Assembly (NCBI RefSeq): GCF_006345805.1
Contig: NC_042997.1
Location: 110,546,001 to 110,610,000, forward strand
Direction of reading: 5' to 3'
From: Octopus sinensis
Lineage: Eukaryota
DNA length: 64,000 bases
The translations under genes were made by a program, and so were the position numbers. Below, piece after piece: positions 13,401-60,140 of this stretch (position 1 is the stretch's first letter; the number at the start of each line of letters is the position of its first letter). The notes under the pieces were generated by a model. That model worked only from the letters and a program-made list of their open reading frames with translations. It was not told the origin of the DNA and searched no databases.

Positions 13401-16400
13401 GGAGAACCGGTGGAGATGTCACAAAGAATAGAGCCTTCTGCTGAAGGGAGCGGACGGTAGGCAAATTTACAATTGATAAACTTGGGCGAAGTTAAATCCA
13501 ACTCCGCTAAAGGTGGTTGATCCTGCGAAATAGCAGTTAAGTCAATTGCTGCAGGAGAGGAAATGGAATTGACAGGGAGTCTAGAGAGAGCATCAGCTGG
13601 GACGTTCTCCTTCCCTGGCACATGTCAAATGTCACTTGTAAACTGAGAAATATAATCCAGGTGATGGAAAGCACGAGGGGAGAGTTTATCCATTTTAGAA
13701 GATAGTGCAAACGTAAGGGGCTTGTGATCAGTATAAATCACAAACTCTCGTCCCTTGAGCTGGTGCTGAAAATGCCGAACTGACAGATAGATCGCTAGTA
13801 ACTCACGATCAAAAGTACTATATCTGCGTTCAGCAGGCTGCAGCTGGCAAGAAAAGAAAGCCAAAGGTTTAGTTTCACCATCTATGGTGTGCTGCAAGAC
13901 AGCGCCAATTGCAGAATCTGATGCGTCCACAGATAAAGTAAGTGGAGCATCAGGAGCCGGATGTGCTAGAACAGGAACTGAAGCTAGTTCCTTTTTAACT
14001 AACTCAAAGGCAGACAGTGCTTCAGCTGAAAGAGTAAGACGGGCGTCTTTTTTAGAATTGCCCTTTAGCATCTGCATTAAAGGAAATGACTTGTCTGCAC
14101 ACCGGTTTATGAAACGTCGATAGAAATTAACTATACCCAAAAAATGGTGAAGTTGATGCAAAGAAGAAGGTGGTGCGATGCGCTGAATTGCATCGACTTT
14201 AGATGAGAGAGGTTTGATTCCACTCGAATCAATACAATGACCGAGAAAATCAAGAGATGATTGCCCAAAAACACACTTGTCTGGATTAATGCAAACACCA
14301 TAGTCGCAAAGACACTGAAAAAGCTGAGACAAGTGCTGGAGATGATTTTCATGCATATCACTTGCGATGAGGATATCATCGACATAAGCAAAAACAAAAT
14401 CAAGTCCACGAACAACTTCATCTATAAAACGTTGGAACGTACTAGTGGCGTTCCGCAAACCAAAACTCATGTATAGAAATTCGAAACAACCAAAGAGAGT
14501 GGTAATTGCCGTTTTAGGAATATCGTCTGGGTTGACCAGTATTTGATGATAAGCACGTATGAGGTCAACCTTAGAAAAATGGTACAGCCATGAAGATTCG
14601 CTGAAAAGTCATTAAGATTCCTAATTGGATATCTGTCAGGAATCGTCACAGAATTTAGACGCTGATAATCTCCCACCGGGCGAAAATCTGTATCCCCTTT
14701 TCGAACTAAATGAAGGGGTGATGCCCATGGACTGGTGGATGGGCATATCAGACCAAGCTGGAGCATATGCTCAAACTCAGCCCTAGCCGTTTTAAGATGG
14801 TCAGGTGCAAGACGCTGTGGGCACGAAAAAACAGGCAGCCCAGTAGTTGTAATGAAATGGAGTGTGGAGTGTATGGGTTTTGCCATTTTAAAAGTAATAT
14901 CGAGTAGCTCTGGAAAAGAAGCCAAAAGAGAATGAAAAACATCTCCAGATGTAGCAACAAAAAATGTCGGGCTAAGAGCTGAATCGGTAGATTCTCTGGT
15001 CAGCATGGAGAGTGTAGTTGAACTGTCAACTAGCCTCCGACGTCTGACATCTACCAATAGATCAAAGTTATTTAGAAAATCCACACCTAAAATAGGATGC
15101 GGAATGTCAGCAATGACAAAAACCCACTGAAAATCTCGACAAAGATTTATGTCACAAGGTGTAAAGAGATCTGACCGAATGTGGCTATTGGTGACGAGTC
15201 AATAGCGTGCAAGGTAACATTAGATCGTTTTGGCCTGTCGGTTGTGAGACACAGAGGCCAAATGCTGCAACAAGAATCACTGTCCATTAAACGACAGACA
15301 TTAAACGATGATGATAACATTGCTAGTACTCTATCAGAAAGACCAAGATCCCTCTGCAAAGCTAAGTAATACTTGACCCTGATCAGCTGCTGACTCCTTA
15401 CAGAGCTCAAGTGAGGCCCATGCTGCAGTATCGTTCCCATCTTTGAATCAGAGCAGCTGTTGTGTTTACACAGGTAACTTCAACCACATCCAACCAAGTT
15501 GTTCAACTGAGAGACAAAGATCCACGCATCGACACATTACAAACACTTGTCTCCTCAGGCGTATTGCTTCCCTTCTGTTTCTGCAACAACTTCTACAGAT
15601 GCTGGCATGGCTGCAAGGTAAAGAAGCTCCCTTCACAACCGTATGGTTCCGGGTTCAACCCATTCATGGGGGTATTTTGAGCAAGTAGGTTTTACTTTAG
15701 CTGTGGATTGACCAATGTTTTGTGAAGGGAATTTGATAGGGAGAAATTGTATGGAAGCCCATTATGTGTGTGTGTCTCTCTTTCCACTGAGTTACATCCA
15801 AATAGCCTCTCCATCCAGGCCAACCCACCATCATTTGACTCTTGTCTTTCCATCACTTCATTATGTTGCACAAAACTCTCTACTAGTCCTTCTTCCCCGC
15901 CACTGCAACTCTCTTTAATCCTGCCCTAACATTAACCCAGCACAGACCAACTTGCACTGACCTCACCAGTCTGGGGGAACAGGCCAAAGGTTACTGGCAC
16001 TGCCCCTCTCCCCACTCAGTGAAGCTTTTGTAAAAGCAGACTTATAGGGACAAGACATTCCAGTTGTAACCATCCTGTCTTTTTTAGTGTATCTAGGACT
16101 ATACTACCCAACGTGTTCTTCGTTAGCCAAGATGATGTGAGGCTGATCAATCTGTTATTTCTAGTAGGCAGAGCAACCACACTGTAGTTCTTTTATTATC
16201 TTATAAAAAAATTTCAGGTGAAGGAGGTCGAGTATTCCAAGGTAAACTTAGACCAGATAATATGGTTTTCAAGTGGCACTTGCTCAATTAACAGTACACC
16301 TTCATATTTTTATTACAAAGAAAGATAAACACACCCACCCGATCACGCACACACACATACAGGGTTTAGATAATTATTCTTGATAAAATCTGATTAATTA

Positions 16401-20530: not shown

Positions 20531-21997
20531 GTATGTATATATAGGAAAATGTGTTGTTGAAAATCTGCATGGAAACACGCCACCCTCTTTTGTTATATAT
20601 AATATAAATAGATATATATATATGCATATATACATATATGCACATATACATACATATATGCACATACTTACATATATATGCATATACAGGTACAGAATGT
20701 CACAAAACATAAACAACATGAAATACAAAAATGACATGGATTACAAAATACGAAAACAACATGGAAAATGAAGGCAAACCTGGGTATGAGAACAACGAGA
20801 GAAACAAATAGAAAGCAAGACAAGTAACAACATAAAGAATGACTCTTGATATATATATTATATTATTATATGATTGAACACCAGGCATCCATTTCCAAGT
20901 AAGTTTATATATAATTGAAACTTATAGGAAAGCAAAAGATGAAGACAGGTGTAGGAACAAGCAGGTGTATTAGTTTGATGCTTAGGAAAAATGGAAAAGT
21001 CTTTTACGTTTCGAGCCTAAGCTCTTCAGCAGAAAAGAATGAGAAAGTAAACAGAGAGAGAATGAAAAAAACTTGTAGATTTCAGCAGTCCAACATGGCC
21101 AATATCTATATATATATACTAGCATTATGACCCGTCTTTGCCGGGTCATAGTGCTAGTGCATGTATATATGTGTATATATATGTGTACATATTACATGTA
21201 CATCTATATATATATATATATATGTGTACATATTACATGTACATCTATATATATATATATATATGTGTACATATTACATGTACATCTATATATATATATA
21301 TATATGTGTACATATTACCTGTACATCTATATATATATATATATATGTGTACATATTACATCTATACATCTATATATATATATATATGTACATATTACAT
21401 CTATACATCTATATATATATATATATATGTGTGTACATATTACATCTATACATCTATATATATATATATATATATGTGTGTACATATTACATCTTACATC
21501 TATATATATATATATGTATATGGCTACATATTACATCTATACATCTATATATATATATATATATTATATATATTATATATAGATATATATATATATATAT
21601 GTGTGTACATATTACATCTATACATCTATATAATATATATATATGTGTACATATTACATCTATACATCTATATATATATATATATATATGTGTACATATA
21701 CCTATCTATACATCTTATATATATATTATATAGATATATATATATATGTGTACATATTACATCTATACATCTATATATATATATATATATATATGTGTAC
21801 ATATTACATCTATACATCTATATATATATATATATATGTTGTGTACAATTACATCTATACATCTATATATATATATATAATATATATATATGTGTACATA
21901 TTACATCTATATCATCTATATATATTATATAGTATGTGTACATATTACATCTATACATCTATATATATATATGTGTGTGTACATATTATTACATTCT

Positions 21998-22049
<52 letters not shown>

Positions 22050-22659
22050 ACATATTACATCTATACATCTATATATATTATATATATATTATATATATAT
22101 ATATATGTGTACATATTACATCTATACAATCTATATATATATATAGTGTACATATTACATCTATACATCTATACATATATATATATATGTGTACATATTA
22201 CATCTATACATCTATATATATATATATATATATGTGTACATATTACATCTATACATCTATATATATTATATATATATATGTGTACATATTACATCTATAC
22301 ATCTATATATATATATATATATATGTGTACATATTACATCTACATCTATATATTATATATATATGTGACATATTACATCTATACATCTATATATATATAT
22401 ATATATATAGTGTACATATACATCTATACATCTATATATATATATATATATATGTGTACATTACATCTATATATATATATATATATATATGTGTACATAT
22501 TACATCTATACATTATATATATATATATATGTGTACATATTACATCTATACATCTATATATATATATATATGTGTACATATTACATCTATACATCTATAT
22601 ATATATATACATATATATGTATACATATTACATCTATACATCTATATATATATACATCT

Positions 22660-22711
<52 letters not shown>

Positions 22712-23492
22712 ATATATACATATTATATATATATATATATACATCTATATAATACAAAATACAAAGCTATATCTTGATATCGCTAGTGATAACAATACTA
22801 AAAATATATAACAGACTGGAATTGTAGGACTATTCCATTTTTGCACACTAATTTTATTTTTAATTTATTTTCATTCATGTGAAACCACTTATTCAAGTTC
22901 AAGTCATTGATGCAATTTTATACCAATTGCTATTTTTACTTTTGTAATGTTACGATTATATTATACTTTAGTTTGATTTTAATTATTACTTACTACATAT
23001 AATTCAATTATTATTATTATCTCTAATTTTTATTGTTACAGTGAAAGTATCTGACATAAAATAGAGAAATGTTTTTGTTTCACTTTTAACACGTAATACT
23101 GAAATAGTGGAGAAGATATGATATTGCTATGGGCTCGCCCTAGGCAAGAAGTTGAACTTTTTTTTGCCCATGAAACTACATGGACCCTAAGTAAGGCAGG
23201 TGTAAAATTTGAATGAAATTGGTTGTGTAGTTCTCAAGTTTTAGGGAAACACACAAACAGACAGACACACATTCTCAGTTTTATATATATTGAGATGTAT
23301 ATATATATATATATAAGGATAAGATCGTTAATTTAAATTAAATAGCAATCTTATCAAGTGGTCATCATGGAAATAAAAACCTTCAAAGGTAATAATTATT
23401 ATTAAAATTATAACTTAGGGTGGTTTTAGAGATCATGGCTGCTATTTTCAGCATGGTAGTATCTCGTAGATACCCTAAGTTATAATTTTATT

Positions 23493-28205: not shown

Positions 28206-29699
28206 CACAATGCATGTCATGTATTAATGTCTGAGTTCTTCTGTAGCTCAGGGAACCTCATAGCTGAGACTCCTCCTCCTACATTCCAAGAAACCTCCAT
28301 TCATACCCTCCCCCAGTTCCTGTCCTGCATTGTTAACAATGTCAGGCAAGGGAGGTAACTCCCTATCTATAACACCCATAGCGCATTTCAGAATATCACA
28401 AAGGCTATTTTGTAATTTCCATTCATCCATTTTCTCTGCCAACTATTTCTGGGAGGAACTTGGCGATAAAGTTCTCAGGCTCCTCCACATAGGGTCCTAT
28501 CAGAAACAACCATTGCTACACTTTCCTGCTGGATTCCCAAGCATTGCCGACTAAAATTACGAATATTTATCCAACCATCTCATACTTGTCTACCCCTAGG
28601 TTTTCAGCCGGTTGACTCAGCTTGAAGAATGAAGAATTTGTTTTGCGATTCTCCCTGTGACATTCTAATTCCAGGTCCATATTACTAAATCTAGGATCTT
28701 TCAATGCAGAGAAGAAGTTGTAGCTCAACCTGGAAAGACATCCTGATCTCTGAGCTATGCACCCTGTCAAGTAACATTACCCCAGAGAGCCTTCAAAGGA
28801 CCCCCATTTTAACTGCTTCTATTCACAATCATACGCTTTCAGTTATTACCCAACATTTATTTGTTGCCACCATCACCTTATTGGCACATGTGCCGATGGC
28901 ACATGAAAAACAACATTCAAGCATGGTCGTTGCCAGTGCCGCCGGACTGGCCCTGTGCAGGTAGCACATAAAAAACACCTTTTGAGCATAGACGTTACCA
29001 GAACCACCTGACTGGCCCTTGTGCCGGTGGCATGTAAAAGCACCCACTACATTCTCGGAGTGGTTGGCATTAGGAAGGGCATCCAGCTGTATAAACTTTG
29101 CCAGATGAGACTGAAGCCTGGTGCAGCCATCTGGCTCACCAGTCCTCAGTGGAACCGTCCAACCCATGCCAGCATGGAAAGCAGAGGTTAAACAACAATG
29201 ACGATGATGATGATGATGATTCATGACTTGAAGTGAAGATAATGATTTTGGCATTTTTACCAATTTCTCCTCTTCTAAGAATCAAATGCTGAAGCTGGCA
29301 CTTTACTTTTCTAGCATCTGCAACTCCAGCATCCGATTCAGCCTCTTGTCTTCCATCATCATCATCATTTAACGTCCGCTTTCCATGCTAGCATGGGTTG
29401 GATGATTTGACTGAGGTCTAGCAAACCAGACTCCAATCTGATCTGGCAGAGTTTCTACAGCTGGATGCCCTTCCTAACGCCAACCACTCAGAGTGTAGTG
29501 GGTGCTTTTACATGCCACCGGCACGAGAGGCCAGTTTGGTGGTACTGGCAATGGCCACGCTCAAATGGTGCTTTTTACGTGCCACCTGCACAGGAGCCAA
29601 TCCAGCGGCACTGGCAACGACCTCGCTCGAATGTTTCACATATCACTTGTGAATATGAGCCCAAGATATGCAAATTCCACTTGTCTCAATAATGTTCTC

Positions 29700-31330: not shown

Positions 31331-33890
31331 GTATATATATATATATATATCAAAACAGAAGATTGGAACAATGTTTTGGTATTCTGTATTCACCATTACA
31401 TGTGTTTCATTTGCTAATAGGAGTTACAATATTGTACATATAGCAGGAAGCATGTATAATATTGTATCTCCTATAAGCAAATGAAATGGTGAATAAATAA
31501 TGCCAAAAATTTGTCCACACTCCTGTTTTGGTATTATTTCTATGCAGAAAATATTTCCCAGTATTTTCAATTCTTATGTATTCCTTGCACAAATATAGGC
31601 CTCACCGAGGCAATGACTAGTGACCGAGACCTTTGGAAAGATGCTGTGCTTGAGAAGACTCAGCAAGCCAAATGAGACAATAACCTCATGGCCTATGCCA
31701 GGGGTGTAACCAGCCCACTTATGCATACCTTTCCTTCATTGGACACTAAACTTTGCTTGTGAAGACCTGTTGAGGCAAGTGAAATCGAAATCAAATTCGA
31801 TGACTGGCATCCGTGCTAGTGGAGCGCTAAGAGCACCATCTGAGCGTGATCTTTGCCAGAGCAGCTAACTGGCTTCCTTGTTGGTGGCACGTAAAAAGCA
31901 CCATTTGAGCATGATCGTTACCAATGTCACCTTACTGGCACTTGTGCTGGTGGCACGTGAAAAAACATTTGAGTGAGGTCGTTGCCAGTGCTGCTGGACT
32001 GGCTCCTGTGCAAGTGGCACGTAAAAAACGCCATTTGAGCATGGTTTTTGCTAGTACCACCTGACTGGCCCTCATGCCGGTGGCACATAAAATGCACCCA
32101 CTACACTCTCGGAGTGGTTGGCATTAGGAAGGGCATCCAGCAGTAGAAACTCTGCCAGATCAGATTGGAGCCTGGTGCAGCCATCTGGTTCGCCAGTCCT
32201 CAGTCAAATCATCTAACCCATGCCAGCATGGAAAGCGGAGTCAAACGATGATGATGATATAACATACAGATCTAAGATACTGGAATTAGTAGATGTACTT
32301 CAAGAGGACACACACACACACACAGAGGCAGATAAACTAATCTCAATAAAAACAAACCACTACAAACCATTGATTCCGATAAATATTTTAGCTACTCGTT
32401 TATTATCTTCATTAAAATTCATTAAGTTTTATTGCACTTGTTACTATTGTTGTTGAAGCTGCTGCTGTTGTTGTAGTAAACAAACGAATGATTACAAAAG
32501 GTCGCAATGACCCAGAATTATGTCTTCAGTGACAACTGTTGACAAATTATTTACATAACACATCTCCTTCCTGTCATCCCTGCTACCACTCCACCATTAC
32601 TACCAAGTTCAGGTCAACCCGGAGAAAGCCTATCTCTGATAACAGCCATTCCAAATGTGACCATTCAGCCTTTTCTTTTTCTTCAGTAGTACATAGGACA
32701 CTTTAATCACACCAGGGAAGACAGAACAAATGATGTCCTGTTGTGAAGGTAAAACACATCAGGAGAGATTGGAAAATGGCTGAGGATAAGAACATCCAGC
32801 CTGAGGAAACAATGTCGAGAACTAGAAAACCATGAATGAGAAATGGTAACCTGATTTGTCTTAGAAAAAATTCCTTTTAATTAAGAACTTCCTTAAGGTA
32901 TGACAACCTGTTCAACCCATGCTAACATGCAAAACCAAGCATAAAATAATAATGAGGATGCTTTTGATATAGATTGGTGATGTATCATTTTGATAATGTA
33001 GATATTTGATAAGATTTTAATAACACAGGTGCCAGCACACCTGTGTGGCATAGGTATACAGGTATGGTTGTCTGGTTGAGAAGTTTGCTTCCCAATCACA
33101 CGGTTTCCGGTTCAGTCCCATTGCATGGCACCTTGGGCAAGTGTCTTCTACTATAGCCCTGAGATAACCAAAGCCTTGTGAATGAATTTGGTAGATGGAA
33201 ACTGAAAGAAGCCCCCATCATATATCATCATCATCATCATTATTTAATGTCTGTTTTCTATGCTGGCATGGATTGGGTGGTTTGACAGGAGATGGCAAAC
33301 TGGAGAGCTGCAACATGCTCCAAGTGTCTGTTTTGACAGTTTCTATAGCTGGATGCCCTTCCTAACACCAACAACATTACAGAGTGTACTGGGTGCTTTT
33401 TATGCTTGTGTGTGTGTCTGTCTGTCTCACTCTCCTTGTTTTGAAATCACATGACAGTTATCAACAAGTGTCACATCACAAGTAGTAGCTTTCGTTTCTA
33501 ATAGTCTACAAAACCACATCTAGTCACAGAGAAATTATCTCGCTTGGAAACAAGTGAGGGTTGGCAACAGGAAAGGCATCCAGACATAGAAAAATCTGCC
33601 TTAGCAAACCCCATCCGACTCCTGCAAGCATGGAAAGTGGATTTTATGACAATGAGGATTATGTTAATTACAGTGATTTGCATAATATTGAAGCAATTAT
33701 TTTTTTATTGTATGTATATCCCACCACTAATCACTCAACTGGAAAACTTAATTTACCAGCACAATGACTAGAAATAGCGACCAGAAATAATGACTTCTGA
33801 ATAATGATAAGAGTGGAATGTTGAGACAGAATAAAGCAATAATCTCAACAATATAGACAACATTCACAGAAACAATACAAAGAACTCTTT

Positions 33891-44051: not shown

Positions 44052-45750
44052 ATTATTATTTTTCCTTCTTTCTTCAAAATTTCTTCCGTTTCTCGCCGGG
44101 TATTTTCCGTACACCTAGGGCAGAGAAGCTCATTGCATGCATTCCCAGATTACACACGCAAATTCACAGGTAAAATATGTATTTAAAAAATTAATGAATA
44201 AATAAATTCATGAATGGATGTTGTTTTCACAGCGATAATGCTCTTCTCAGTACATGAGCCGTTCCAGTTAACACGATTTTTTGCACTTCCTGTAGGGATG
44301 GTAAGTCTGGTATCATTTTCAAATAGGTTTCAGTGCCTTTTTTTAATCATTCCTAGAGATCCTACAATCACTGGTACTGTAGTCGCCTTAAGATGCCACA
44401 TTTTTTCAATTTCTATTAGCAAGTCTTTATATTTACTGATCTTGTCAAATTCTTTCGCCGCTATATTGTGATCGCAAGGAATACTCATGTCAATTAATAA
44501 ACACATCTTTTTTGTCTGATCTTTTATAATAATATCCGGTTTATTAGCTTTTATAGTTTTGTCGGTATGTACGGGGAAGTCCCATAGAATCGACACATTT
44601 TCTCCTTCAATCACAGCTTCAGGATAGTGTTTATACCATTCGTCAGCAGTTTTGATTTTATAATGCCGACATATTGTCCAGTGTAAATACTGACCGACTC
44701 TGTAATGTCTTGCTTTATATTCTACAGGTGCTAAGATTCTACACTCTGAGATTAGATGGTCTATTGTTTCAATCTCATCGTTACAGAATCGGCATTTTGG
44801 GTCAGCTCCATTTTTTATCACATTGGCTTGGTAGTTCCGGGTTAATAAGCTTTGGTCTTGAGCAGCTAAATATGAAACCTTCACTCTCCGCTTTTAGCCC
44901 TGAGCTTCGTAACCATTGGTGCGTGTGTTTCTGGTCGACATCAGCTTGTTTGCTACGGGCTACATAATTGCCATCTGCTAGCTAATTTTTCATGTGCTTT
45001 TATCTTTGCAATTAATTTTATTTTATTTACACCAGCAGTTGGCGCATTTCCTTCGACCTGATCAATCTGGTGGGTATCTAAGAGATCAGTAGCGAATTTT
45101 TTGCTCTCTTTCAGAATAGAGTGAATTGTTTTCGGTCTTTCGTGTTTTTCAACAAGTTTTAGCATCCAATCGTTGGTTGCTTCAAGGTATTTGGCCAGTC
45201 CGATTGTGGTGGTTTTGTACGTAAGTTCAAGCTGGATCAAACCTCGTCCTCCTTGAGCTCTGGGAAGGTAAAGACGATCCACGTCTGCCTTTGGATGGTT
45301 CATTTTATTACAAGTCAGTAGCTTCAAGGTATTTGGCCAGTCCGATTGTGGTGGTTTTGTACGTAAGTTCAAGCTGGATCGAACCTCGTCCTCCCTGAGC
45401 TCTGGGAAGGTAAAGACGATCCACGTCTGCCTTTGGATGGTTCATCTTATTACAAGTCAGTAGCTTCAAGGTATTTGGCCAGTCCGATTGTGGTGGTTTT
45501 GTACGTAAGTTCAAGCTGGATCGAACCTCGTCCTCCCTGAGCTCTGGGAAGGTAAAGACGATCCACGTCTGCCTTTTGATGGTTCATCTTATTACAAGTC
45601 AGTAGCTTCAAGGTATTTGGCCAGTCCGATTGTGGTGGTTTTGTACGTAAGTTCAAGCTGGATCGAACCTCGTCCTCCCTGAGCTCTGGGAAGGTAAAGA
45701 CGATCCACGTCTGCCTTTGGATGGTTCATCTTATTACAAGTCAGTAGCTT
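44052..45750 (-). mobile_element. 5'-truncated R4/Dong-clade non-LTR retrotransposon (RLE endonuclease)
   Basis: HPKADVDRLYLPRAQGGRGL; CCHC knuckle CRFC...ETIDHLISEC; PD-(D/E)xK motif KPDIII...LLID; C-terminus ...VLRRALSL*; 3' end runs into AAAAATAATAAT(GAT)n. Confidence 0.9.
45183..45750 (-). repeat. Four tandem 142-bp copies of the R4 element 5' end
   Basis: Identical ORF starts at 45372, 45514 and 45656 (period 142). Confidence 0.93.
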
Positions 45751-45754
45751 GCGG

Positions 45755-45960
45755 ATTTATGTTTGCATTTTTATCCAGATTTGGCCAGAACTGGACAGCC
45801 AGAGACGATGTGCTCAACTGTATCGTTGCACTCGTTGCACATTCTGCATTTGGTGTTAGGGCCTGTTTTCGCTATTTTACTTTGATAGTCGTTTGTGATC
45901 AAGCATTAGTCTTTTGCAGTGAGAACCAGCTCTTCTATTTCTGCTTTTAGTCCAGCTCTT
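45755..45960 (-). mobile_element. Second, more diverged R4/Dong fragment (zinc-knuckle region)
   Basis: Translates as AGLKAEIEELVLTAKD*CLITNDYQSKI...KCRMCNECNDTVEHIVSGCPVLA, homologous to 44700-44900. Confidence 0.75.
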
Positions 45961-48864: not shown

Positions 48865-49282
48865 TGTAGTGATGCTACAGTGTAGGGTTCGGCGCGCATG
48901 CGCAGAATGGGACTACTTCCGGGTGGCCACCGGAAGTCTTCCCCATGCGCATGTGCGGGAAAACATCTCTCGAGCCCGCGAACCTCAAATCTCTCTCTTC
49001 GGCTCAAGACAGCACTGCGATCGGTCACGGTTTTCCTGGCTCTGACAGCCACACACCAGCTTCAACCAACTTCAACCAACCTCAACGACCAACACCAGCA
49101 GTATATCAGAGGCTGTCTATTCCCCCATCAGACAACGTACAACCATGAATCAATAAACCAAGTTGTCTGTTCACCTTTAACCTGAGTTTCGTCTGTTTGT
49201 TTTCTACAAGAATTATTGTATGTGACTAGAAAGGATCTCGACACCCTGCCAGTGCTTCGATGATAGATCCTTTCACGTTACA
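48865..49282 (+). repeat. 5' LTR of Gypsy element
   Basis: TGTAGT...GTTACA, direct repeat of 58381-58798; contains AATAAA. Confidence 0.96.
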
Positions 49283-50431
49283 ATTGGTGACCCCTAGTTG
49301 AGAAAAAGAACAGGATAGAAGAAGACACAGCGAACAGGTTTTTTTTTGGGGCCGAAGAGCGCGGAAATTCACATTTATTTTCCTATTTTCTCCTTTTCAG
49401 CACGGCGAGGTGGGTAAAATAGCCTTATTCATCGCACACAGTACAAAAAAAAAAAAAAAAAACAAAGAAAAAAGAAAACACACACACATTCATTTTTTTT
49501 TCCTTTTCTGTATTTTGTTTTCCTTGTACACACCTATTCCTTTTTTTGCTACCCACGAGGTGCACACACAAACACAATTTTGAATTGCCTTCTCGGTTCC
49601 ACGTGTTCTCTCTCCACTTCTAGACCATACCTTCTGCCCCCTTCTCACAGATTCCTTCCGACAAAGGCATGGCTTCAGGTTTGCCTTCATGGTACTTGTT
49701 AATAATCGTGGTCCCGGTTTTGCACACGCGAATTCGCGCGCGCGCGCGCGCCAGACGTAGGTACTCGATACTCGAGATCCTACGAGGTGACTTGCGCATG
49801 CGCAGTGCAGAATTCGCGCGTGCGCGTTAAACCCCCCCCCCCGGAAAAAAAAAAGGATTTTTTTTAAAGATACCTTTCTGCTTTTTAACACAAAAAGGTG
49901 TTGGATTTAACTAAAAATATATATATGTGTGTGTTGTGTGTATATATAACATATTCAATTTTACACAAAAAAAATTACATAGTCGCTTTCCTCGCGGATT
50001 TACAGATAATGAATTAATTACTATTTTACAGAATAAAATTAATGAATTAATTATATAAATTAAATAATTCTTGAAAATTAATTATTATTAATACTCGAGA
50101 TCCTACGAGGTGACTTGCGCATGCGCAGTGCGCGATTCGCGCATGCGGGTTAAACCCCCCCCCCCGGAAAAAAAAAAGGATTTTTTTAAAGATACCTTGG
50201 TCGCTTTCCTCGCGGATTTACAGATAAATGAATTAATTACTATTTTACAGAATAAAATTAATGAATTAATTATATAAATTAAATAATTCTTGAAAATTAA
50301 TTATTATTAATAATATTTTTTGAACAAAGTAAAAAGTAATTACTTTTTTTTTACAGAAACGCGAACGGGGAATTTCAGTTTAAAGTTTATAAATAAATAC
50401 ATTTCATGTGTAATGTAAAATAGTAGTCAAT

Positions 50432-51580
50432 TAATTAAATACCTTCTTTTTCTGGGGTATTATTCGTTCAAACTCGTCACGTATTTGTAACTTTTCGATG
50501 TAAGTCTTAAAAAGTTGCAGCAGCTTAGCAGAAATGTCACGTTATAATTTCTACAATGCAATGGTTTCAATACACGCGGAAGATCATACCCATTCAAACT
50601 TTATATCATTCTGAAACATCTTTCAGATATTCATCACACGACCGTTTTCATTTTGTCCAAATATTTTTTTTCACAGAAATTCATCAAAATTGTGGAGATT
50701 TTATGACAGTGTAGCAAATTAGTAATCAACTAATTAAATACCTTCTTTTTCTGGGGTATTATTCGTTCAAACTCGTCACGTATTTGTAACTTTTCGATGT
50801 AAGTCTTAAAAAGTTGCAGCAGCTTAGCAGAAATGTCACGTTATAATTTCTACAATGCAATGGTTTCAATACACGCGGAAGATCATACCCATTCAAACTT
50901 TATATCATTCTGAAACATCTTTCAGAATATTCATCACACGACCGTTTTCATTTTGTCCAAATATTTTTTTTCACAGAAATTCATCAAAATTGTGGAGATT
51001 TTATGACAGTGTAGCAAATTAGTAATCAACTAATTAAATACCTTCTTTTTCTGGGGTATTATTCGTTCAAACTCGTCACGTATTTGTAACTTTTCGATGT
51101 AAGTCTTAAAAAGTTGCAGCAGCTTAGCAGAAATGTCACGTTATAATTTCTACAATGCAATGGTTTCAATACACGCGGAAGATCATACCCATTCAAACTT
51201 ATATCATTCTGAAACATCTTTCAGAATATTCATCACACGACCGTTTTCATTTTGTCCAAATATTTTTTTTCACAGAAATTCATCAAAATTGTTGGAGATT
51301 TTATGACAGTGTAGCAAATTAGTAATCAACTAATTAAATACCTTCTTTTTCTGGGGTATTATTCGTTCAAACTCGTCACGTATTTGTAACTTTTCGATGT
51401 AAACCTTTCAATGTAAGTCTTAAAAAGTTGCAGCAGCTTAGCAGAAATGTCACGTTATAATTTCTACCATGCAATGGTTTCAATACACGCGGAAGATCAT
51501 ACCCATTCAAACTTTATATCATCATGAAACATCTTTCAGAATATTCATCACACGACCGTTTTCATTTTGTCCAAAAATAC
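50432..51580. repeat. Tandem 300-bp repeat array in the left Merlin arm (about 3.8 units; about 1.9 inverted units at 53232-53795)
   Basis: Unit starts TAATTAAATACCTTCTTTTTCTGGGG at 50432, 50731, 51031, 51331. Confidence 0.92.
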
Positions 51581-51589
51581 ATCGGGAGA

Positions 51590-52480
51590 TCATACCCCTT
51601 CAAACTCTATACCATTCGGAAGATGTTTCAGAATATTCATCAAGCAATCGTGTGCAGTTTGCCCATATTGTTCCTTCCACAGAAACTCATCAAGGTACGA
51701 GTCCACCATGGTGGAATGTACCCCCATCATCGTTTTAAATTTTCTTTTGGCATTCTTCCAGTAACATTCCACAGAATTTGTGTGTACACCTGTTAGCGGA
51801 TCCACAAAATTCTGGGAATGGTTTACTGTGAAATGGATGTATTTTGGTGTCACATCCATTTCTGCAATACCATTATAGGCGGGCCAGCAATCCGAATGAA
51901 TTGTTGTGCCCGGTCTAATAAATTTTTTGATGATGGGTAGCAGAGTTTCCGAGGAACGGTCAGCTACGAACAGTATGAAGCCTTTTTTGTCTTCTCTGTC
52001 GTACCCTCCAAAGACCCATCTCTCTTGTGGCGTTCTTCCTCTATTGTATTTTCTCTCACATCAGACTTTCATCTACTTCAACAATGTGTCCGACACCACC
52101 AATTTGGTATGGATTCTTCATTAGATTATTGCTACAGATATCTCGCATGTATTGATACCATTGAATAACGCTAGGTTTTGACAATCCAGTCATTGCTATT
52201 GCTCCGGTTATTGTTAGGTTACTGCCCCAACAATATATAACATAAATGAAATCGTGCAGTTTCAACTTGCTATTTTCGAGATACGATTTCTTTCTAATCG
52301 ACTCTTTTTCCCCTTTGTGAGTTGGGCAGCGAAAAATTTTTTCCTGGTTGTGTTTTATAAGAGTCATCTCTCTATGGCATTTTGAGCAAATTGGAGTTGA
52401 GGACTCAACACTTTTTTGTCCTTTAGGAATGAATAGATACTGTCAAAATCTTTTACGATGCTTTCTATCTCATACAACAT
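51590..52480 (-). pseudogene. Merlin/ISXO2-like DDE transposase (about 295 aa) with a few single-base frameshifts
   Basis: Stitched frame: MLYEIESIVKDF...PICSNCHREM...FRCP (Zn ribbon)...QWYQYMRDIC...GVGHIVEVDES...RKYNRGR...WVFGG...TTIHSDCWPAY...HFTVNHSQNFVDP.TGVHTNSVECYW...YLDEFLWK. The D/D/E triad (VDES, HSD, NSVE) is intact. Confidence 0.92.
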
Positions 52481-54532
52481 TTTTTCTTAATTTAACTCAG
52501 TTCAACTGATGAAGATAAACTGAAAATAAAGTTATTTTCAGTATCAGTTAGCTGACTATCATTCAGTTAGCTCTGATTGGTTAGATTTTAGAACTTTCTC
52601 TGTCCCCTCTTTCAAACTAATTTTTGTTGTGGGGGGGGGGGGGAAAGATGAACGATTTAAAATAAATATATCTTAATTGTAGTGTGAGAAAAGTATATAT
52701 ATTCTGATGATAAAATATATTCTTTCAAAACATTTGTTAGTCCTACTATGAAAGATTGTTTTGGGCTGAAACCCAAGTTAACGAAAGTACATGAATAAGG
52801 ATTGACTGTCATGATGTTGAGTCTTATTAGATTCTTGTCCGATTCAGTATTTTGTCATGTGCTTTCTGAAGTAGGCAATAAAAACCTTATAAACAAACTG
52901 TTATCTACATAATACTGTGGTAATTAGACAAACATTAACTGAAATTAATTATGCCTTTCCTAACAGAAAATGACATAATAGTATTTATTATGTGAACATG
53001 TAAAGGAAACTGAAAATTGTGATATGTTCCTCTCATTACTGGCACTTATTAACTTGAGAAAAATAAAAGGCCACATATAGAATGAGATATTCGAAAATAA
53101 AAAAATGTTAAAAGATACTCCTCGGAATTAAAATCATGACAAAGATTTTCAAAATCCCTTTTTTGCGATAGATGGAGATTGCCTGAAGTAAATAAGGGAG
53201 AAGGAGAGAGAAGACAGCAGAAGGAACAGCATTGATGAATTTCTGTGAAAAAAAATATTTGGACAAAATGAAAACGGTCGTGTGATGAATATTCTGAAAG
53301 ATGTTTCAGAATGATATAAAGTTTGAATGGGTATGATCTTCCGCGTGTATTGAAACCATTGCATTGTAGAAATTATAACGTGACATTTCTGCTAAGCTGC
53401 TGCAACTTTTTAAGACTTACATCGAAAAGTTACAAATACGTGACGAGTTTGAACGAATAATACCCCAGAAAAAAGAAGGTATTTAATTAGTTGATTACTA
53501 ATTTGCTACACTGTCATAAAATCTCCACAATTTTGATGAATTTCTGTGAAAAAAAATATTTGGACAAAATGAAAACGGTCGTGTGATGAATATTCTGAAA
53601 GATGTTTCAGAATGATATAAAGTTTGAATGGGTATGATCTTCCGCGTGTATTGAAACCATTGCATTGTAGAAATTATAACGTGACATTTCTGCTAAGCTG
53701 CTGCAACTTTTTAAGACTTACATCGAAAAGTTACAAATACGTGACGAGTTTGAACGAATAATACCCCAAAAAAGAAGGTATTTAATTAATTGACTACTAT
53801 TTTACATTACACATGAAATGTATTTATTTATAAACTTTAAACTGAAAATTCCCCGTTCGCGTTTCTGTAAAAAAAAGTAATTACTTTTACTTGTTCAAAA
53901 AATATTATTAATAATAATTATTTTCAAGAATTATTTAATTTATATAATTAATTCATTAATTTTATTCTGTAAAATAGTAATTAATTCATTTATCTGTAAA
54001 TCCGCGAGGAAAGCGACCAAGGTATCTTAAAAAAATCCTTTTTTTTTTCCGGGGGGGGGGGTTAACCCGCATGCGCGAATCGCGCACTGCGCATGCGCAA
54101 GTCACCTCGTAGGATCTCGAGTATTAATAATAATTAATTTTCAAGAATTATTTAATTTATATAAATTATTCATTATTTTATTCTGTAAAATAGTAATTAA
54201 TTCATTTATCTGTAAATCCGCGAGGAAGCGACTATGTAATTTTTTTGTGTAAAATTGAATATGTTATATATACACACACACACACACATATATATATTTT
54301 TAGTTAAATCCAACACCTTTTTGTGTTAAAAAGCAGAAAGGTATCTTTAAAAAAAATCCTTTTTTTTTTCCGGGGGGGGGGGGTTTAACGCGCACGCGCG
54401 AATTCTGCACTGCGCATGCGCAAGTCACCTCGTAGGATCTCGAGTATCGAGTACCTACGTCTGGCGCGCGCGCGCGCGCGAATTCGCGTGTGCAAAACCG
54501 GGACCACGATTATTAACAAGTACCGCCTTCAT

Positions 54533-57500
54533 TTACGGGGGATATGGGCCTGTGGTTTGCCCAAGTGGAGTGGTATTTTGTTGCACATGCCATTTCTCCA
54601 CAGCAGCAGTTGCACCTGCTATATTCCGGCTTACATCCCCGACTCGCCGCATCGATCAGGGATCTAATAATAAGTCCCCACCCGGATGCACATACGCGTC
54701 TGTGAAAGCAGAAATCCTCCGCCGCAACACACGTTCGGGGAGAGCAATATTCAGATTGCCACGATGGCCGATGGAATACTGGAATTTCCGAATCCATCTC
54801 CATCGCGAGGCCTCTGTGCATGTATAGGGGGCCCTGCGCAAATTTCACTAGCCGAGCGGATTGATGCGCTCTCACGCGGCGAATCGACGATCTATCCCGT
54901 GCGATCGAGCGCCGACAACGCAGTCGTAGTCGCTCTACCAAAAGGGCAGATCGGTGTACCCAGCCGTGCACTTTCAAGCCCTCGGAAAACTAAATCCGGA
55001 GGAGGTGAGCACGTCACCTTCTTCCATCTCGTTTCCAAACATCGTGCATTCTATGTAAAAGATCTGGTGTCGAAGACATTCTTCATGGTAGACACGGTTC
55101 CTGTTGCAGCATCTGGCCCCTTCGTCTGGCTGCAGACAAGCCGAAGCGCTCTTCGATTGTCTTGCATGCTATTGACTCGTCTCCCATAACCACTTACGGT
55201 CAGATTTCGCTGCGCCTCAACCTCAACCTTCGCCGAGACTTTCGATGGGTTTTCGTCATCGCTGACATCCCACATCCTATTCTCGGCGCTGATTTCCTGG
55301 ATAGGTTTAACCTATTGGGTGGATGTCAGGCGTCGGAGGCTTCTTGATAGCACGACGTCGCTCTCTACACCCGACTGGGAGTTCCACCACTGCGGTCCTT
55401 AGCCCGACATTCTTTGTTGCCACCTCTGGAGACCCATTTCACTCTCTTTGGTTTCATTTCCGGAGCTAGTGGACATTGCCTTTAAACCGGAAAATCCTAC
55501 CCACTCGACCCTCCATTTCATCACCACCAATGGGCCACCTGTTTCTCACGCCCTTCTCACGCCCCCGGCGCCTAGCGCCAGACCGACTTAAAACGGCCAG
55601 AGCCGAGTTTGAGCACATGCTTCAACTTGGCATTATACGCCCCTCCACCAGCCCATGGGCATCTCCCCTTCATTTGGCGCGAAAGGGCGAGTCTGATTTT
55701 CGCCCGTTTGGAGACTATCGACGCCTCAATGCCGTCACAATAGCCGATCGCTATCCGATTAGAAATCTCCGGACTTTACAGCAAATCTCCATGGTTGTAC
55801 CATTTTTTCGAAGGTCGATCTGATACGCGCTTACCACCAAATACCGGTCAACCCAGCCGACGTTCCAAAAACTGCAATCACTACCCCTATACCCGGTTTG
55901 GGTGTTTTGAGTTTTTGTACATGAGTTTCGGTTTGCGGAATGCTACTAGCACCTTCCAGCGTTTCATTGATGAGGTTGTCCGCGGTCTTGATTTTGTGTT
56001 TGCCTATGTCGATGACATACTCATTGCGAGCGACACACGAGAAAATCATCTCTCGCACCTTTCTAACTCTTCCAGCGTCTTCGCGCGTATAGCATACGCA
56101 TAAACCCCGACAAGTGTGTTTTCGGACGCTCTTCCCTAGATTTTCTAGGGCATCATATTGATTCGACTGGAATCAGCCCCCTCTCGTCAAAAGTCGATGC
56201 CATTCAACGCATCGCACCCCCCACTTCCTTGCGCCAGCTCAGGCATTATCTAGGGATGGTCAATTTCTACCGACGCTTCATTCCCGGTTGTGCAGATAAG
56301 CTGCTACCTCTCACCAGGCTGTTAAAGGACTCTCCTAGAAAGGACAGTCAAGTCACCCTCTCTGTTGAGGCAGTGACAGCCTTTGAGTCCATTAAGAAGG
56401 AGCTGGCTTCTGTTTCTTTGCTTGCACATCCAGTTCCTGGTGCTTCTCTCTCTTTGACTGTGGACGCATCGGACACTGCCATTGGCGCTGTGTTACAACA
56501 CACAGTGGATGACCATGTTCGACCTCTAGCCTTCTTTTCCCGTCAACTGCAACCAGCTGAACGACGATACAGCACCTTTGATCGTGAGCTCCTAGCGATC
56601 TATCTATCGGTTCGTCATTTCCAGCATCACTTGAAGGGCGAGATTTTGTGATCTATACGGATCACAAGCCCCTTACGTTTGCCCTGTTTTCAAAAACGGA
56701 CAAACTCTCACCCCGTGCTTTTCGGCACCTGGATTTTATCTCTCAATTTACTAGCAACATTCGACACATACCTGGAAAAGAGAACGTTCCTGCTGACGCT
56801 CTCTCTCCTTCCAGTTTGCGCCCTTTCGTCTCCTGCTGCTATCGACTTAGCTGCCATATCGCAGGAGCAGCCACCTTTGGCGTCGTTAGATTTAACTTCT
56901 CCCAAGTTCTCCTGTTGCCAGTTTTCCTACCTTCCGCTTCCGTCAGCCGAAGGCACCATTCTTTGTGACACTTCAACTGGATCTCCCAGGCCACTGGTGC
57001 CTGAGACCCATCAACGCTCAGTGTTTGAAGCACTGCACTCCTTATCACATCCTGGCATCGCTGCCGCCACCCTCAAACTAATCACTTGCTTCGGTTTTTC
57101 TGGCCGAATATGCGTCGCACAATTACTTGTTGGACACGCCCTGCTCCAAGTGTCAACGATCCAAGATTCAACGGCACGTTCGTGCCCCGCTTGGACAATT
57201 TCCCCCCACGGAGGAGGCCGTTTTCGCCATGTCCACATCGATCTGGTTGGACTATGGCCTGTGAGTCGCGGGTTCTCTTTCTATTAACTGTGTCGATCGT
57301 CTCTCCCGCTGGCCAGAAGCCATTCCGATAGCAGACATTTCTGCTGAGACTGTTGCGCGAGCTTTCGTTTCAAACATGGATTTCTCGCTTCGGAGTCCCG
57401 TCCCGATTGACAACTGATCGTGGACGACAGTTTGAGGCCTCGCTATTTCGCGAATTGTCGCGAATTTTGGGTATGCACCATATCCACACCACAAGCTACC

Positions 57501-58270
57501 ATCCAGCGTCTAATGGATTGGTTGAGCGGTTCCATAGACAGCTCAAGGCCGCTCTTCGTGCCTCTTCGGACCCACAGTCCTGGATCGAATTTCTGCCCAT
57601 TGTGCTTCTCGGCTGTCGGACTGCTGTCAAGGCAGACCTGGGGTTTTCTGCTGCAGAGCTGCTGTATGGTACCACACTGGCATTGCCCGGTACGATGTTG
57701 GTGCCAGACACTTCCCCGCCCCATGATCCGGCGACCTATGTCACCAGACTGCGGGAATATTTTCAAACCTTCCGCCCATGCTTCCCAGAAAGCAATCTCC
57801 ACCGTCCCATCTTCCACCGGATATGAACACCTGGTCGCATGTTTTTGTTCGGGACGATTCTGTGAAGGGCCCACTTGTTTCTCCCTAAAAGGACCTTTTC
57901 GTGTGCTTTCTCGCACACCAAGGTTTTCACGATTGAGATAAATGGTCGTTCGGAGACCGTTTCCGTGGACCGTTTAAAAAAAAGGCACATTTTGAGACGT
58001 CTTCATCTTTTGATGACAACCTTGACACACCCACCTATGCACCTTTAACAACACTTTCACCTGCACAAACGCCTTCACCTGCACAAGCGCCTTCACCTGC
58101 ACAAACGCCTTCAACCTGCACAAACACCTTCACCGGCTCCTACAACACCACCCTCGCCGTCAACGGGTGCCCCGAGCACACCGTATGTTACAAAATCGGG
58201 CAGAACAGTGCATTGGCCCAAGAAACTTTCAAAAACAATTTACATTTAACTTTCTTTAAAATGTTTCTTA
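54533..58270 (+). pseudogene. Gypsy gag-pol reading frame, frameshifted (gag start ATG at 49669 is separated by the Merlin insertion)
   Basis: Removing 49691-54532 restores MASGLPSFTGDMGLWFAQVEWYF (gag). Downstream ORF fragments give protease, RT, RNase H and integrase motifs in Gypsy order. Confidence 0.9.
58055..58135 (+). repeat. 18-bp tandem repeat (TTCACCTGCACAAACGCC) in the Gypsy pol tail, encoding PSPAQT-type repeats
   Basis: 4-5 imperfect units visible. Confidence 0.8.
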
Positions 58271-58380
58271 TTGTATAATAGTATGTACCAAGTCTTCTGG
58301 GGGATCGGCAAGCCTTCTGTTTTCTGCAGCACACCACCACAATATTCTGGTTGCCGTACTTCGCACTCGGAGGGGAGCCC

Positions 58381-58798
58381 TGTAGTGATGCTACAGTGTA
58401 GGGTTCGGCGCGCATGCGCAGAATGGGACTACTTCCGGGTGGCCACCGGAAGTCTTCCCCATGCGCATGTGCGGGAAAACATCTCTCGAGCCCGCGAACC
58501 TCAAATCTCTCTCTTCGGCTCAAGACAGCACTGCGATCGGTCACGGTTTTCCTGGCTCTGACAGCCACACACCAGCTTCAACCAACTTCAACCAACCTCA
58601 ACGACCAACACCAGCAGTATATCAGAGGCTGTCTATTCCCCCATCAGACAACGTACAACCATGAATCAATAAACCAAGTTGTCTGTTCACCTTTAACCTG
58701 AGTTTCGTCTGTTTGTTTTCTACAAGAATTATTGTATGTGACTAGAAAGGATCTCGACACCCTGCCAGTGCTTCGATGATAGATCCTTTCACGTTACA
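58381..58798 (+). repeat. 3' LTR of Gypsy element
   Basis: Same sequence as 48865-49282; preceded by the PPT and followed by the GAAG TSD. Confidence 0.96.
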
Positions 58799-59499
58799 GA
58801 AGTAAGGCTTGCAAGGGCCGGTGAGACAGCCAGAGGGCATGTGTGGGCAGGAAGCACGTGTGGCCAGTTCGTGCAGAGACGACAGAGAGACAAGACGTGT
58901 TTAATTCGTGAGAGTGACCGCTGATTTCGCCGAGGTCAACAGGTCAGGCCTTTTGTATTTCTTTCTCCCGTTTGCTTCTTTATCTGTTGTCCTTTTCCGC
59001 CATCACACTACACATACCAAGGTACCACATAGTGGGGCTGAACTCAGGACTATATGGCTGGGAAACAAGTTCCTTGACCACATTCCCACGCCTGTGCCTA
59101 TCTTATAAATGACCATATAGATTTGACCATTTACATAATGAGCTTAATAATTAGTTAAGATGTTGTTGGGAGATAAGAATGACCACACGATAAATATGTG
59201 TTTCCATTAAAAATAAAAACGGCCCTCCATCAGTTACAATGATGAGGGTTCCAAATGGAACAGAATAGACTGTTTGTGAAATTAACATACAAGTGGCTGA
59301 GTACTCCACAGACATGCTTACCCTTAACGTAGTTCTCAGGGAGATTCAGCGTGACACAGAATGTGACAAGGCTGGCCTCTATTGAATTACTGGTACAACT
59401 CATTTTTGCCAGCTGAATGGAATGAAGTAATGAGAAGTAAAGTGTCTTGCTCAAGGTCAAAATGCGCTGCCAGGAATCACACTCATTACCTTAAAATTC

Positions 59500-60140
59500 A
59501 TCATCATCATCGTTTAACGTCCGTTTTCCGTGCTAGCACGGGTTGGAGGGTTTGACCGGGGTCTGGGAAGCCAGGAGGCTGCACTAGGCTCCAGTCTGAT
59601 CTGGCAGTGTTTCAACAGCTGGATGCCCTTCCTAACTCCAACCACTCCATGAGTGTAGTGGGTGCTGCTTTTTACGTGCCACCGGCACAGGTGCCAGGGG
59701 AGGCTGGCAGCGGCCACGATTGGTTGGTGCTTTTTACATGCTGCCAGCACAGAAGCCAGTCAAAGTGGTGCTGGCATCAGCCATATTTGGATGGTGCTTT
59801 TTACATGCCACCGGCACAGGTATCACAACTACAATTTCCATTTGATATTTATTTTGATGTTGGTGTACTTGACTCAATAGATCTCCTCAAGCACAGCAGG
59901 TCACCCTACGATCAAAGGTAAGCACAGCAGGTCGTTCTGCAATCCAAGATACTTTGGATGGGCTGGGGCTATGCGAAACTGGTGCAGGAAGCAATCATGA
60001 ACTCACATTATTTGTCGGGTCTTTGCAGTCACAGCATATCTCCAGAGATCTTGGTCTTTCGTTATTGCTTCTGTGAGGCCCAACATTCAAAGGTCATATT
60101 TGACTACCTCATCCCATGTCTTCCTGGATCTACCTTAAGA
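59500..60140 (-). mobile_element. SINE-like retroposon with a (GAT)n tail and internal tandem ATGGTGCTTTTTACGTGCCACC units (family A; many copies, e.g. 960-1260, 7560-7990, 28860-29220, 29355-29640, 31620-32255)
   Basis: Recurring CATCATCGTTTAACGTCCGCTTTCCATGCTAGCATGGGTTGG...CTGGATGCCCTTCCTAACGCCAACCAC sequence; an 8-bp TSD is visible around the copy at 16832-16972. Confidence 0.85.

What the first reader, a model, noticed from the sequence alone, without database searches (positions are those of the whole stretch)
49691..54524. Merlin-family transposon with giant (about 1.3 kb) foldback TIRs
Seen: 8-bp TSD, GG-starting termini, an ISXO2-like DDE transposase, and inverted arms 49691-50987 vs 53232-54524 that are near-identical. 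Each arm has layered internal repeats: a 323-bp-spaced duplication at 49771/50094, then 300-bp units. Established: Merlin/IS1595 elements make 8-9 bp TSDs and, as far as I recall, have TIRs of tens to a few hundred bp. Inference: this is a foldback-type Merlin, architecturally analogous to Galileo among P elements. It may be able to form large hairpins or drive ectopic inversions.
Basis: partly seen in the sequence, partly recalled or inferred. Interest (0 to 1): 0.8.

Follow-up and report, generated by a model that had tools for sequence, protein, structure and literature searches.

The report
Octopus Merlin transposon with 1.3-kb inverted ends
This is a real, recently inserted but coding-defective cut-and-paste transposon of the Merlin family in an octopus genome, with unusually long (1.3 kb) repeat-filled inverted ends; zebrafish Merlins with about 1-kb ends are already catalogued, so it is a tidy new example, not a new kind of element.

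Summary
Window 49691-54524 is a 4834-bp element with GG…CC termini and a perfect 8-bp target-site duplication (GCCTTCAT). Its inverted arms, 49691-50987 and 53232-54524, differ by 4 substitutions and 16 gap columns, almost all single-base length differences in short runs. The minus strand carries an IS1595/Merlin DDE transposase broken by two frameshifts.

A second copy in the Octopus sinensis assembly (L001) has the same 1.3-kb-arm layout, so a palindrome misassembly is unlikely.

New points:
- The inner part of each arm is a 300-bp tandem unit that begins with a decayed copy of the last ~33 codons of the transposase. The arms therefore grew by recruiting and amplifying the gene's 3' end.
- The two arms evolve in concert: 37 sites are copy-specific yet identical in both arms, and none are arm-specific.
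- The element lies inside an LTR retrotransposon whose 418-bp LTRs are identical, so the insertion is probably recent.

Novelty is modest. A published table of Repbase Merlins lists two zebrafish families with 1000-bp TIRs containing mirrored tandem repeats. The growth pattern matches that described for Galileo. The hairpin and inversion ideas remain untested. Verdict: new member of a known kind; interest about 0.3.

The parts
49683..49690 (.). Left copy of the 8-bp target-site duplication, GCCTTCAT
   Evidence: Read directly from the sequence; identical to 54525-54532.
49691..49730 (+). Left terminus, a 40-bp perfect TIR core starting 5'-GG. It contains the motif GGTACTnnTn8GTGGTCCC, which is conserved across related Merlin families.
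   Evidence: The 40-mer occurs only here and inverted at 54485-54524. The motif is found at element ends in L001, L002, L003 and L004.
49691..50987 (+). 3'-side arm (left TIR, symmetric part), 1297 bp. Contents: terminal core, (GC)n, GC-rich module A twice, AT-rich module B twice, then the start of the 300-bp array.
   Evidence: blastn against 53232-54524 gives 1303 columns at 98.6%; 4 substitutions; modules.
50417..51575 (+). 300-bp tandem array, 3.8 units. Read on the minus strand, each unit starts with a decayed copy of the last ~33 codons of the transposase, followed by 3'-flank sequence.
   Evidence: TRF: period 300, 3.8 copies, 97% matches. Unit translation NFDEFL*KKIFGQNENGRVMNILKDVSE* against the real YLDEFLWKEQYGQTAHDCLMNILKHLPNG. 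blastn 51576-51693 against 53232-53351 at ~80%.
51590..52480 (-). Merlin/IS1595 DDE transposase pseudogene, about 297 codons. Relative to the L001 copy it has a 1-bp deletion near 52404 and a 2-bp deletion near 52057. Catalytic D137, D198 and E239 are retained in the conceptual translation.
   Evidence: Three-frame translation; Pfam PF12762 and NCBIfam NF033547; alignment with relatives; indel map against L001; coordinates.
52481..53231 (-). Unique AT-rich region upstream of the transposase (31% GC). No ORF and no repeat. Presumed 5' UTR or promoter region.
   Evidence: No ORF. Collinear with L001 within a 94.5% alignment. GC content.
53232..54524 (-). 5'-side arm (right TIR), 1293 bp. Inverted copy of 49691-50987, including about 1.9 units of the 300-bp array at 53232-53803.
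54525..54532 (.). Right copy of the 8-bp target-site duplication, GCCTTCAT
48865..49282 (+). 5' LTR of the LTR retrotransposon that hosts the Merlin insertion (context, used for dating)
   Evidence: 418 bp, 100% identical to 58381-58798; TG...CA ends and 4-bp TSD GAAG.
58381..58798 (+). 3' LTR of the host LTR retrotransposon

Best explanation
This is a copy of an octopus Merlin-superfamily (IS1595-like DDE) cut-and-paste DNA transposon. Its family has expanded its terminal inverted repeats to about 1.3 kb.

Transposition (inferred from the superfamily). The transposase recognises the conserved terminal ~25 bp (GGTACTnnTn8GTGGTCCC), excises the element and reinserts it with an 8-bp staggered cut. 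That cut produced the GCCTTCAT duplication seen here.

How the arms grew (shown by sequence relationships).
- A ~300-bp segment spanning the last ~33 codons of the transposase and its 3' flank was duplicated in tandem.
- That array was then copied in inverted orientation to the other end of the element.
- Outer modules of 100 bp and 86 bp were also duplicated.

Concerted evolution. The two arms are kept nearly identical along the element's lineage. The pattern is shown. The process is inferred: gene conversion, or template switching between arms during repair or replication.

State of this copy. It cannot make transposase as assembled, because of two frameshifts. It inserted into a young LTR retrotransposon. 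It was therefore either mobilised in trans or inactivated after insertion, or some of the indels are assembly errors.
For: - Merlin identity: PF12762 at 73.7 bits and NF033547 at 103.3 bits; 797 homologues, mostly with PF12762, the best at 93% identity in O. sinensis; DDE residues aligned; 8-bp TSD and GG termini.
- The architecture is a family trait. L001 (O. sinensis CM016862.1, 3899-8199) is collinear with the window element. Its arms, about 1.3 kb, are 99.45% identical to each other, and its array has a 320-bp unit at 1.9 copies.
- Concerted evolution: within-copy arm identity is 99.7% and 99.45%, against 96.1-96.7% between copies for all arm pairings. 37 sites are copy-specific yet shared by both arms, and 0 are arm-specific and shared between copies.
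- Gene-end origin of the array.
- Terminal motif conserved across families with 56-93% transposase identity. A sister family (L004, 62% identity) has TIRs of about 360 bp and a 9-bp TSD, which suggests stepwise lengthening.
- Recency: perfect TSD, and insertion inside an LTR element with 418-bp identical LTRs.
- The same two growth modes, tandem-repeat expansion and recruitment of the region next to the transposase gene, are described for Galileo (PMC3573991).
Against: - Only two copies could be examined. No octopus genome could be searched by DNA, so copy number, the spread of TIR lengths and the existence of an intact master copy are unknown.
- Both copies have frameshifts: the window copy near 52404 and 52057, and L001 in its C-terminus. 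Current activity is therefore unproven.
- The L001 copy has 4 extra bases between one terminus and its putative TSD.
- The arm differences are nearly all run-length indels. These could be assembly noise, so the exact identity figures and the frameshifts are uncertain.
- The LTRs could have been kept identical by conversion rather than by youth.
- No paralogous empty site was found.
Confidence: 0.88

Rival explanations
1. Assembly artefact. A palindromic misassembly or collapsed hairpin read created the two inverted arms around a normal short-TIR Merlin.
For: The arms are almost identical. The differences between them are mostly single-base run-length indels of the kind long-read assemblies produce. 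Raw reads were not available.
Against: An independent copy in a different assembly (GCA_006345805.1) has the same arms, with its own sequence variants shared by both arms. The arms carry different numbers of 300-bp units, 3.8 against 1.9. A perfect 8-bp TSD flanks the outer ends. True substitutions exist between the arms.
Confidence: 0.04
2. Composite structure. Two separate non-autonomous ~1.3-kb elements inserted in opposite orientation on either side of a transposase gene, as in a bacterial composite transposon, rather than one element with long TIRs.
For: Short Merlin MITE-like elements with the same terminal motif exist in octopus, for example L003 1810-2016. Nesting of transposons is therefore common in these genomes.
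Against: Each arm has the terminal motif only at its outer end. The 40-mer and the degenerate motif occur exactly twice in the window. The inner ends merge into the transposase 3' coding sequence. There are no internal TSDs. The same junctions are present in L001.
Confidence: 0.03
3. The arms look similar only because each copy is young and came from a different subfamily master. No homogenising process acts between the arms.
For: Both copies look recent: perfect or near-perfect TSDs and high arm identity.
Against: Even then, each subfamily's master must have acquired the same 37 substitutions in both arms, with none arm-specific. That requires arm-to-arm copying somewhere in the lineage. Selection for transposase binding could hardly hold 1.3 kb identical, given that related families share only the terminal ~25 bp.
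Confidence: 0.05

Closest known systems
Zebrafish Repbase families Merlin-1_DR and Merlin-N5_DR (and probably Merlin-2_DR)
   Same: They belong to the same superfamily. TIR size is listed as 1000 bp, with tandem repeats mirrored in both ends: for example, a 113-bp unit at 5.2 copies at 531-1114 and 3193-3775 of Merlin-N5_DR, and 44/99-bp units at both ends of Merlin-1_DR. Merlin-2_DR has mirrored arrays of a 79-bp unit of about 1 kb (PMC8101967 S1 Table).
   Different: The host is a vertebrate, not a cephalopod. Here the arms are somewhat longer: 1.3 kb symmetric, and 1.9 kb of repeat on the gene's 3' side. The repeat unit is 300 bp and is demonstrably derived from the transposase 3' end. Whether the zebrafish repeats have such an origin is unknown.
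Canonical Merlin elements (Feschotte 2004, as summarised in PMC8101967)
   Same: DDE_Tnp_IS1595 transposase of about 300 aa in a single ORF, 8-9-bp TSD, and TIRs beginning 5'-GG (here).
   Different: The published TIR range is 24-462 bp. Most Repbase entries with a stated size have 20-325 bp. Curated mollusc Merlins average 1635 bp in total length (PMC10294476), against 4834 bp here.
Galileo (P superfamily, Drosophila)
   Same: Long TIRs (up to about 1.25 kb) with internal tandem repeats. Unit number differs between the two TIRs of a copy and between copies. TIRs grow by tandem-repeat expansion and by recruiting the sequence next to the transposase gene (PMC3573991). The repeats are proposed, and partly shown, to be secondary transposase-binding sites (PMC3688188).
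   Different: Galileo has an unrelated transposase (THAP plus P-type catalytic domain) and a 7-bp TSD. It has documented roles in natural inversions (PMC2775673), and nothing comparable is shown here. The resemblance is one of architecture only.
Sister Merlin family in locus L004 (ENA assembly ERZ25073769; transposase 62% identical)
   Same: The same terminal motif (GGTACTCCTTAACAACAGTGGTCCC), a 9-bp TSD (TTCGATGTT) and already long TIRs of about 360 bp in a 3.9-kb element.
   Different: The TIRs are 3.5 times shorter. No 300-bp gene-end array was seen.

Membership tests
Merlin superfamily (eukaryotic IS1595-like DNA transposons) | Transposase with the DDE_Tnp_IS1595 catalytic domain | tested here: met
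   PF12762: E 2.1e-20, 73.7 bits against a cut-off of 27. NF033547: E 1.6e-29, 103.3 bits against a cut-off of 75. Both were run on the conceptual translation bridged across the two frameshifts.
Merlin superfamily (eukaryotic IS1595-like DNA transposons) | Conserved D, D, E catalytic residues | tested here: met
   D137 (VEVDES), D198 (HSDCW) and E239 (VECYW) align with relatives. D137 is invariant in the 7-sequence alignment.
Merlin superfamily (eukaryotic IS1595-like DNA transposons) | 8- or 9-bp target-site duplication | tested here: met
   GCCTTCAT on both sides. The L004 relative has a 9-bp TSD.
Merlin superfamily (eukaryotic IS1595-like DNA transposons) | Terminal inverted repeats that begin 5'-GG | tested here: met
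   GGTACTTG... at 49691 and its reverse complement ending at 54524.
Merlin superfamily (eukaryotic IS1595-like DNA transposons) | Intact ORF and demonstrated mobility (autonomous element) | tested here: not met
   There are two frameshifts in this copy and a C-terminal frameshift in L001. This bears on autonomy, not on family membership. Mobility is inferred only from the TSD.
Long-TIR / foldback-like architecture (as in Galileo) | TIRs of many hundreds of bp that make up most of the element | tested here: met
   Arms of 1297 and 1293 bp out of 4834 bp, or 54%; 66% with the extended left array.
Long-TIR / foldback-like architecture (as in Galileo) | Internal tandem repeats within the TIRs, variable in number between arms and copies | tested here: met
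   300-bp unit at 3.8 against 1.9 copies in the window; 320-bp unit at 1.9 copies in L001.
Long-TIR / foldback-like architecture (as in Galileo) | Causes hairpins or ectopic inversions in vivo | not testable with these tools
   This needs population or comparative breakpoint data, or physical assays.
P superfamily (Galileo proper) | THAP/P-type transposase and 7-bp TSD | tested here: not met
   The only Pfam hit is DDE_Tnp_IS1595, and the TSD is 8 bp.
Composite transposon (two independent elements flanking a gene) | Each arm is a complete element with termini at both of its ends | tested here: not met
   The terminal 40-mer and the degenerate motif occur only at the two outer ends.

The most novel reading that the evidence does not exclude
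The long arms may be a functional, self-maintaining device rather than passive growth. The 5' arm carries inverted copies of the gene's own 3' end and 3' flank. A transcript starting in or outside the outer part of the 5' arm would therefore fold into a stem of up to ~1.3 kb between its 5' and 3' untranslated regions. Such a stem could feed small-RNA pathways and give the family a built-in self-silencing or copy-number control. The same hairpin in single-stranded DNA could template arm-to-arm repair, which would explain the concerted evolution. If so, this family would be a tractable model in a cephalopod genome for how long-TIR transposons arise, homogenise and regulate themselves.
Probability: 0.12. 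Interest if true: 0.55.

Novelty: new member of a known kind. Interest (0 to 1): 0.3.

Why it matters
Merlin is a small and little-studied superfamily. It is notably abundant in octopuses: 191 protein hits in O. bimaculoides (PMC8101967), and 18 families covering 2.2 Mb in O. vulgaris, two of them recently active (PMC13282606).

This copy gives an unusually clear picture of how a transposon's inverted ends lengthen. The recruited piece still reads as the transposase C-terminus, and the two arms show a clean signature of concerted evolution. That supports the view, developed for Galileo, that long TIRs arise convergently in unrelated superfamilies by the same two routes.

In practice, such elements are hard to assemble and annotate. 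The O. sinensis copy is annotated as an 'uncharacterized protein'. A curated consensus would improve cephalopod repeat libraries. None of this changes the known picture of transposon biology.

Tried and rejected
- Other copies or fragments in the window: none. Only microsatellite hits were found.
- A paralogous empty site for the joined flanks, in the window or in L001/L002: none.
- Exact-protein look-ups of four window ORFs, to identify the source assembly or further copies: nothing on record.
- L002 (O. sinensis, 56% identical transposase): only one recognisable terminus and no long flanking inverted repeat. Uninformative on TIR length.
- L003 (O. vulgaris): a nest of several Merlin termini and a ~207-bp MITE-like element. 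It was too tangled to give a clean TIR length. L003 and L004 were not available to scripts.
- Rfam and tRNA scans of 48.8-58.9 kb: no hits, so the arm modules are not recognisable RNA-gene or SINE derivatives.
- Literature searches for 'Merlin' together with 'foldback' or 'long TIRs' found no paper describing a foldback-type Merlin. The 2004 paper describing Merlin is not held.
- Not attempted: scans of the viral, metagenome and prokaryotic genome collections, because they would not contain octopus chromosomes.
- Composite-transposon and misassembly readings were considered and rejected (see rival explanations).
Full report
**Observation**

Window 49691-54524 is a 4834-bp element. It begins GGTACTTGTTAATAATCGTGGTCCCGG and ends with the exact reverse complement. 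That 40-mer occurs nowhere else in the 64-kb window, and none is expected by chance. The octamer GCCTTCAT directly abuts both ends, at 49683-49690 and 54525-54532.

A self-comparison gives one inverted alignment, 49691-50987 against 53232-54524. It has 1303 columns and is 98.6% identical counting gaps. A global alignment shows only 4 substitutions and 16 gap columns. Almost all the gaps are single-base length differences in homopolymers or short runs.

- A 100-bp GC-rich module repeated at 323-bp spacing (49768 and 50091).
- An 86-bp AT-rich module repeated at 219-bp spacing.
- A 300-bp tandem unit with 3.8 copies on the left (50417-51575) and about 1.9 copies on the right (53232-53803).

**What it encodes**

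The minus strand between 52480 (ATG) and 51590 (stop) reads as a protein of about 297 residues, interrupted by two frameshifts. Bridged across the shifts, it matches Pfam DDE_Tnp_IS1595 (73.7 bits, cut-off 27) and NCBIfam IS1595 transposase (103.3 bits, cut-off 75).

A search of the large protein collection returned 797 relatives. The best is an Octopus sinensis 'uncharacterized protein' at 93% identity, followed by O. bimaculoides and O. vulgaris proteins. The host is therefore an octopus. The exact source assembly could not be identified.

The catalytic D137, D198 and E239 align with relatives. Compared with the O. sinensis copy, the window copy has a 1-bp deletion near 52404 and a 2-bp deletion near 52057. 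The O. sinensis copy has its own 2-bp deletion, which scrambles its C-terminus. Neither copy is intact as assembled.

**Is the architecture real?**

The O. sinensis locus (L001, chromosome CM016862.1) carries a collinear 4.3-kb element at 3899-8199. It has the same termini, a putative AATTTCTA duplication (with 4 extra bases at one end), arms of about 1.3 kb, and a 320-bp array of 1.9 units.

Four facts argue strongly against a palindrome misassembly:
- An independent assembly shows the same layout.
- The two arms carry unequal numbers of array units.
- True substitutions exist between the arms.
- The target-site duplication is perfect.

The arms are not separate elements either. The terminal motif is found only at the two outer ends.

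**How the arms grew**

Read in the sense of the gene, every 300-bp unit starts with NFDEFL*KKIFGQNENGRVMNILKDVSE*. This is a decayed copy of the true C-terminus, YLDEFLWKEQYGQTAHDCLMNILKHLPNG. At the DNA level, 51576-51693 matches the inner end of the other arm at about 80% identity. The units match each other at 97-100%.

The inner third of each arm therefore descends from an old duplication of the gene's 3' end plus its flank. That segment was later amplified in tandem and copied, inverted, to the 5' side.

A sister family (L004, 62% identical transposase) has the same terminal motif, a 9-bp duplication and TIRs of about 360 bp. This fits stepwise lengthening.

The motif GGTACTnnTn8GTGGTCCC is conserved at element ends across families with 56-93% transposase identity, and in a ~207-bp MITE-like element in L003. 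It is the likely transposase recognition site. This is an inference.

**Concerted evolution**

- Arm identity within a copy is 99.7% (window) and 99.45% (L001).
- Every between-copy pairing, same side or opposite side, is 96.1-96.7% identical.
- Of the variable ungapped columns, 37 are copy-specific yet identical in both arms, none are arm-specific and shared between copies, and 10 are singletons.

The two arms are therefore homogenised along the element's lineage. The pattern is shown. The mechanism is inferred: conversion, or template switching between arms during repair.

**Age and context**

The element sits about 400 bp inside an LTR retrotransposon. That retrotransposon's 418-bp LTRs (48865-49282 and 58381-58798) are 100% identical, end TG...CA and are flanked by GAAG. 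The Merlin insertion is younger than that insertion, so it is probably recent. No empty paralogous site was found.

**Comparison with what is known**

The published Merlin definition is met: IS1595-type DDE domain, 8-9-bp duplications and GG termini.

The 2004 range for Merlin TIRs is 24-462 bp. Curated mollusc Merlins average 1.6 kb in length. However, S1 Table of PMC8101967 lists Repbase Merlin-1_DR and Merlin-N5_DR from zebrafish with 1000-bp TIRs and mirrored internal tandem repeats, and Merlin-2_DR with mirrored arrays of about 1 kb. That paper also notes tandem repeats inside many Merlins. Kilobase-size, repeat-rich TIRs are thus rare in Merlin but already on record.

The two growth routes seen here are tandem-repeat expansion and recruitment of sequence next to the transposase gene. 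They are the same routes described for Galileo in D. mojavensis. I found no paper describing this octopus family or calling any Merlin 'foldback'. The 2026 O. vulgaris repeat annotation counts Merlin families without structural detail.

**Verdict**

This is a genuine long-TIR Merlin element and a new member of a known kind. It may have the longest TIRs yet noted for the superfamily. It also offers a clear view of TIR growth and of arm homogenisation. The hairpin and inversion consequences remain speculation. Interest is about 0.3.

Noticed in passing
window 48865-58798: An LTR retrotransposon hosts the Merlin insertion. Its 418-bp LTRs are 100% identical, with TG...CA ends and a 4-bp TSD (GAAG). 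The interior shows only short ORFs, so it may be a non-autonomous or indel-laden copy despite the identical LTRs.
   Followed up: partly
window 12631-15084 (minus strand): An older Ty3/gypsy-type fragment with ORFs for reverse transcriptase, RNase H and integrase (Pfam RVT_1, RT_RNaseH, rve). It is 73-82% similar to 56067-57763, inside the LTR element above.
   Followed up: partly
window 45034-45885 and 21123-22800: A 142-bp tandem satellite of about 6 units, and a very AT-rich complex minisatellite (GC 0.25-0.29) that produces spurious long ORFs.
   Followed up: no
window 958-1129, 7556-7727, 33225-33396, 59495-59666; inverted at 28981-29213 and 32065-32239: A dispersed repeat of about 170 nt in at least six copies at 61-92% identity. 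It could be a SINE or a MITE family. It was not classified.
   Followed up: no
window 49793-49805 and 50116-50128, mirrored at about 54090-54102 and 54410-54422: TGCGCATGCGCA palindromes lie inside the GC-rich arm module, two per arm. From memory, this resembles the NRF1-type promoter motif. It could be promoter or binding-site material. It was not tested.
   Followed up: no
L003 1810-2016 (O. vulgaris OX597841.1): A ~207-bp MITE-like element bounded by the same Merlin terminal motif. Several further Merlin termini lie nearby at 3904, 7953, 8013 and 8628, so this is a nest of Merlin-derived elements.
   Followed up: partly
L001 6001-6876 (O. sinensis CM016862.1): The gene annotated as 'uncharacterized protein LOC115210589' is this transposon family's transposase. 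Its last ~25 residues are out of frame relative to all relatives, because of a 2-bp deletion.
   Followed up: yes
window 44330-44884 (minus strand): An ORF with a weak zf-RVT match (25 bits, just below the Pfam cut-off of 27.5). It is probably a LINE fragment.
   Followed up: no
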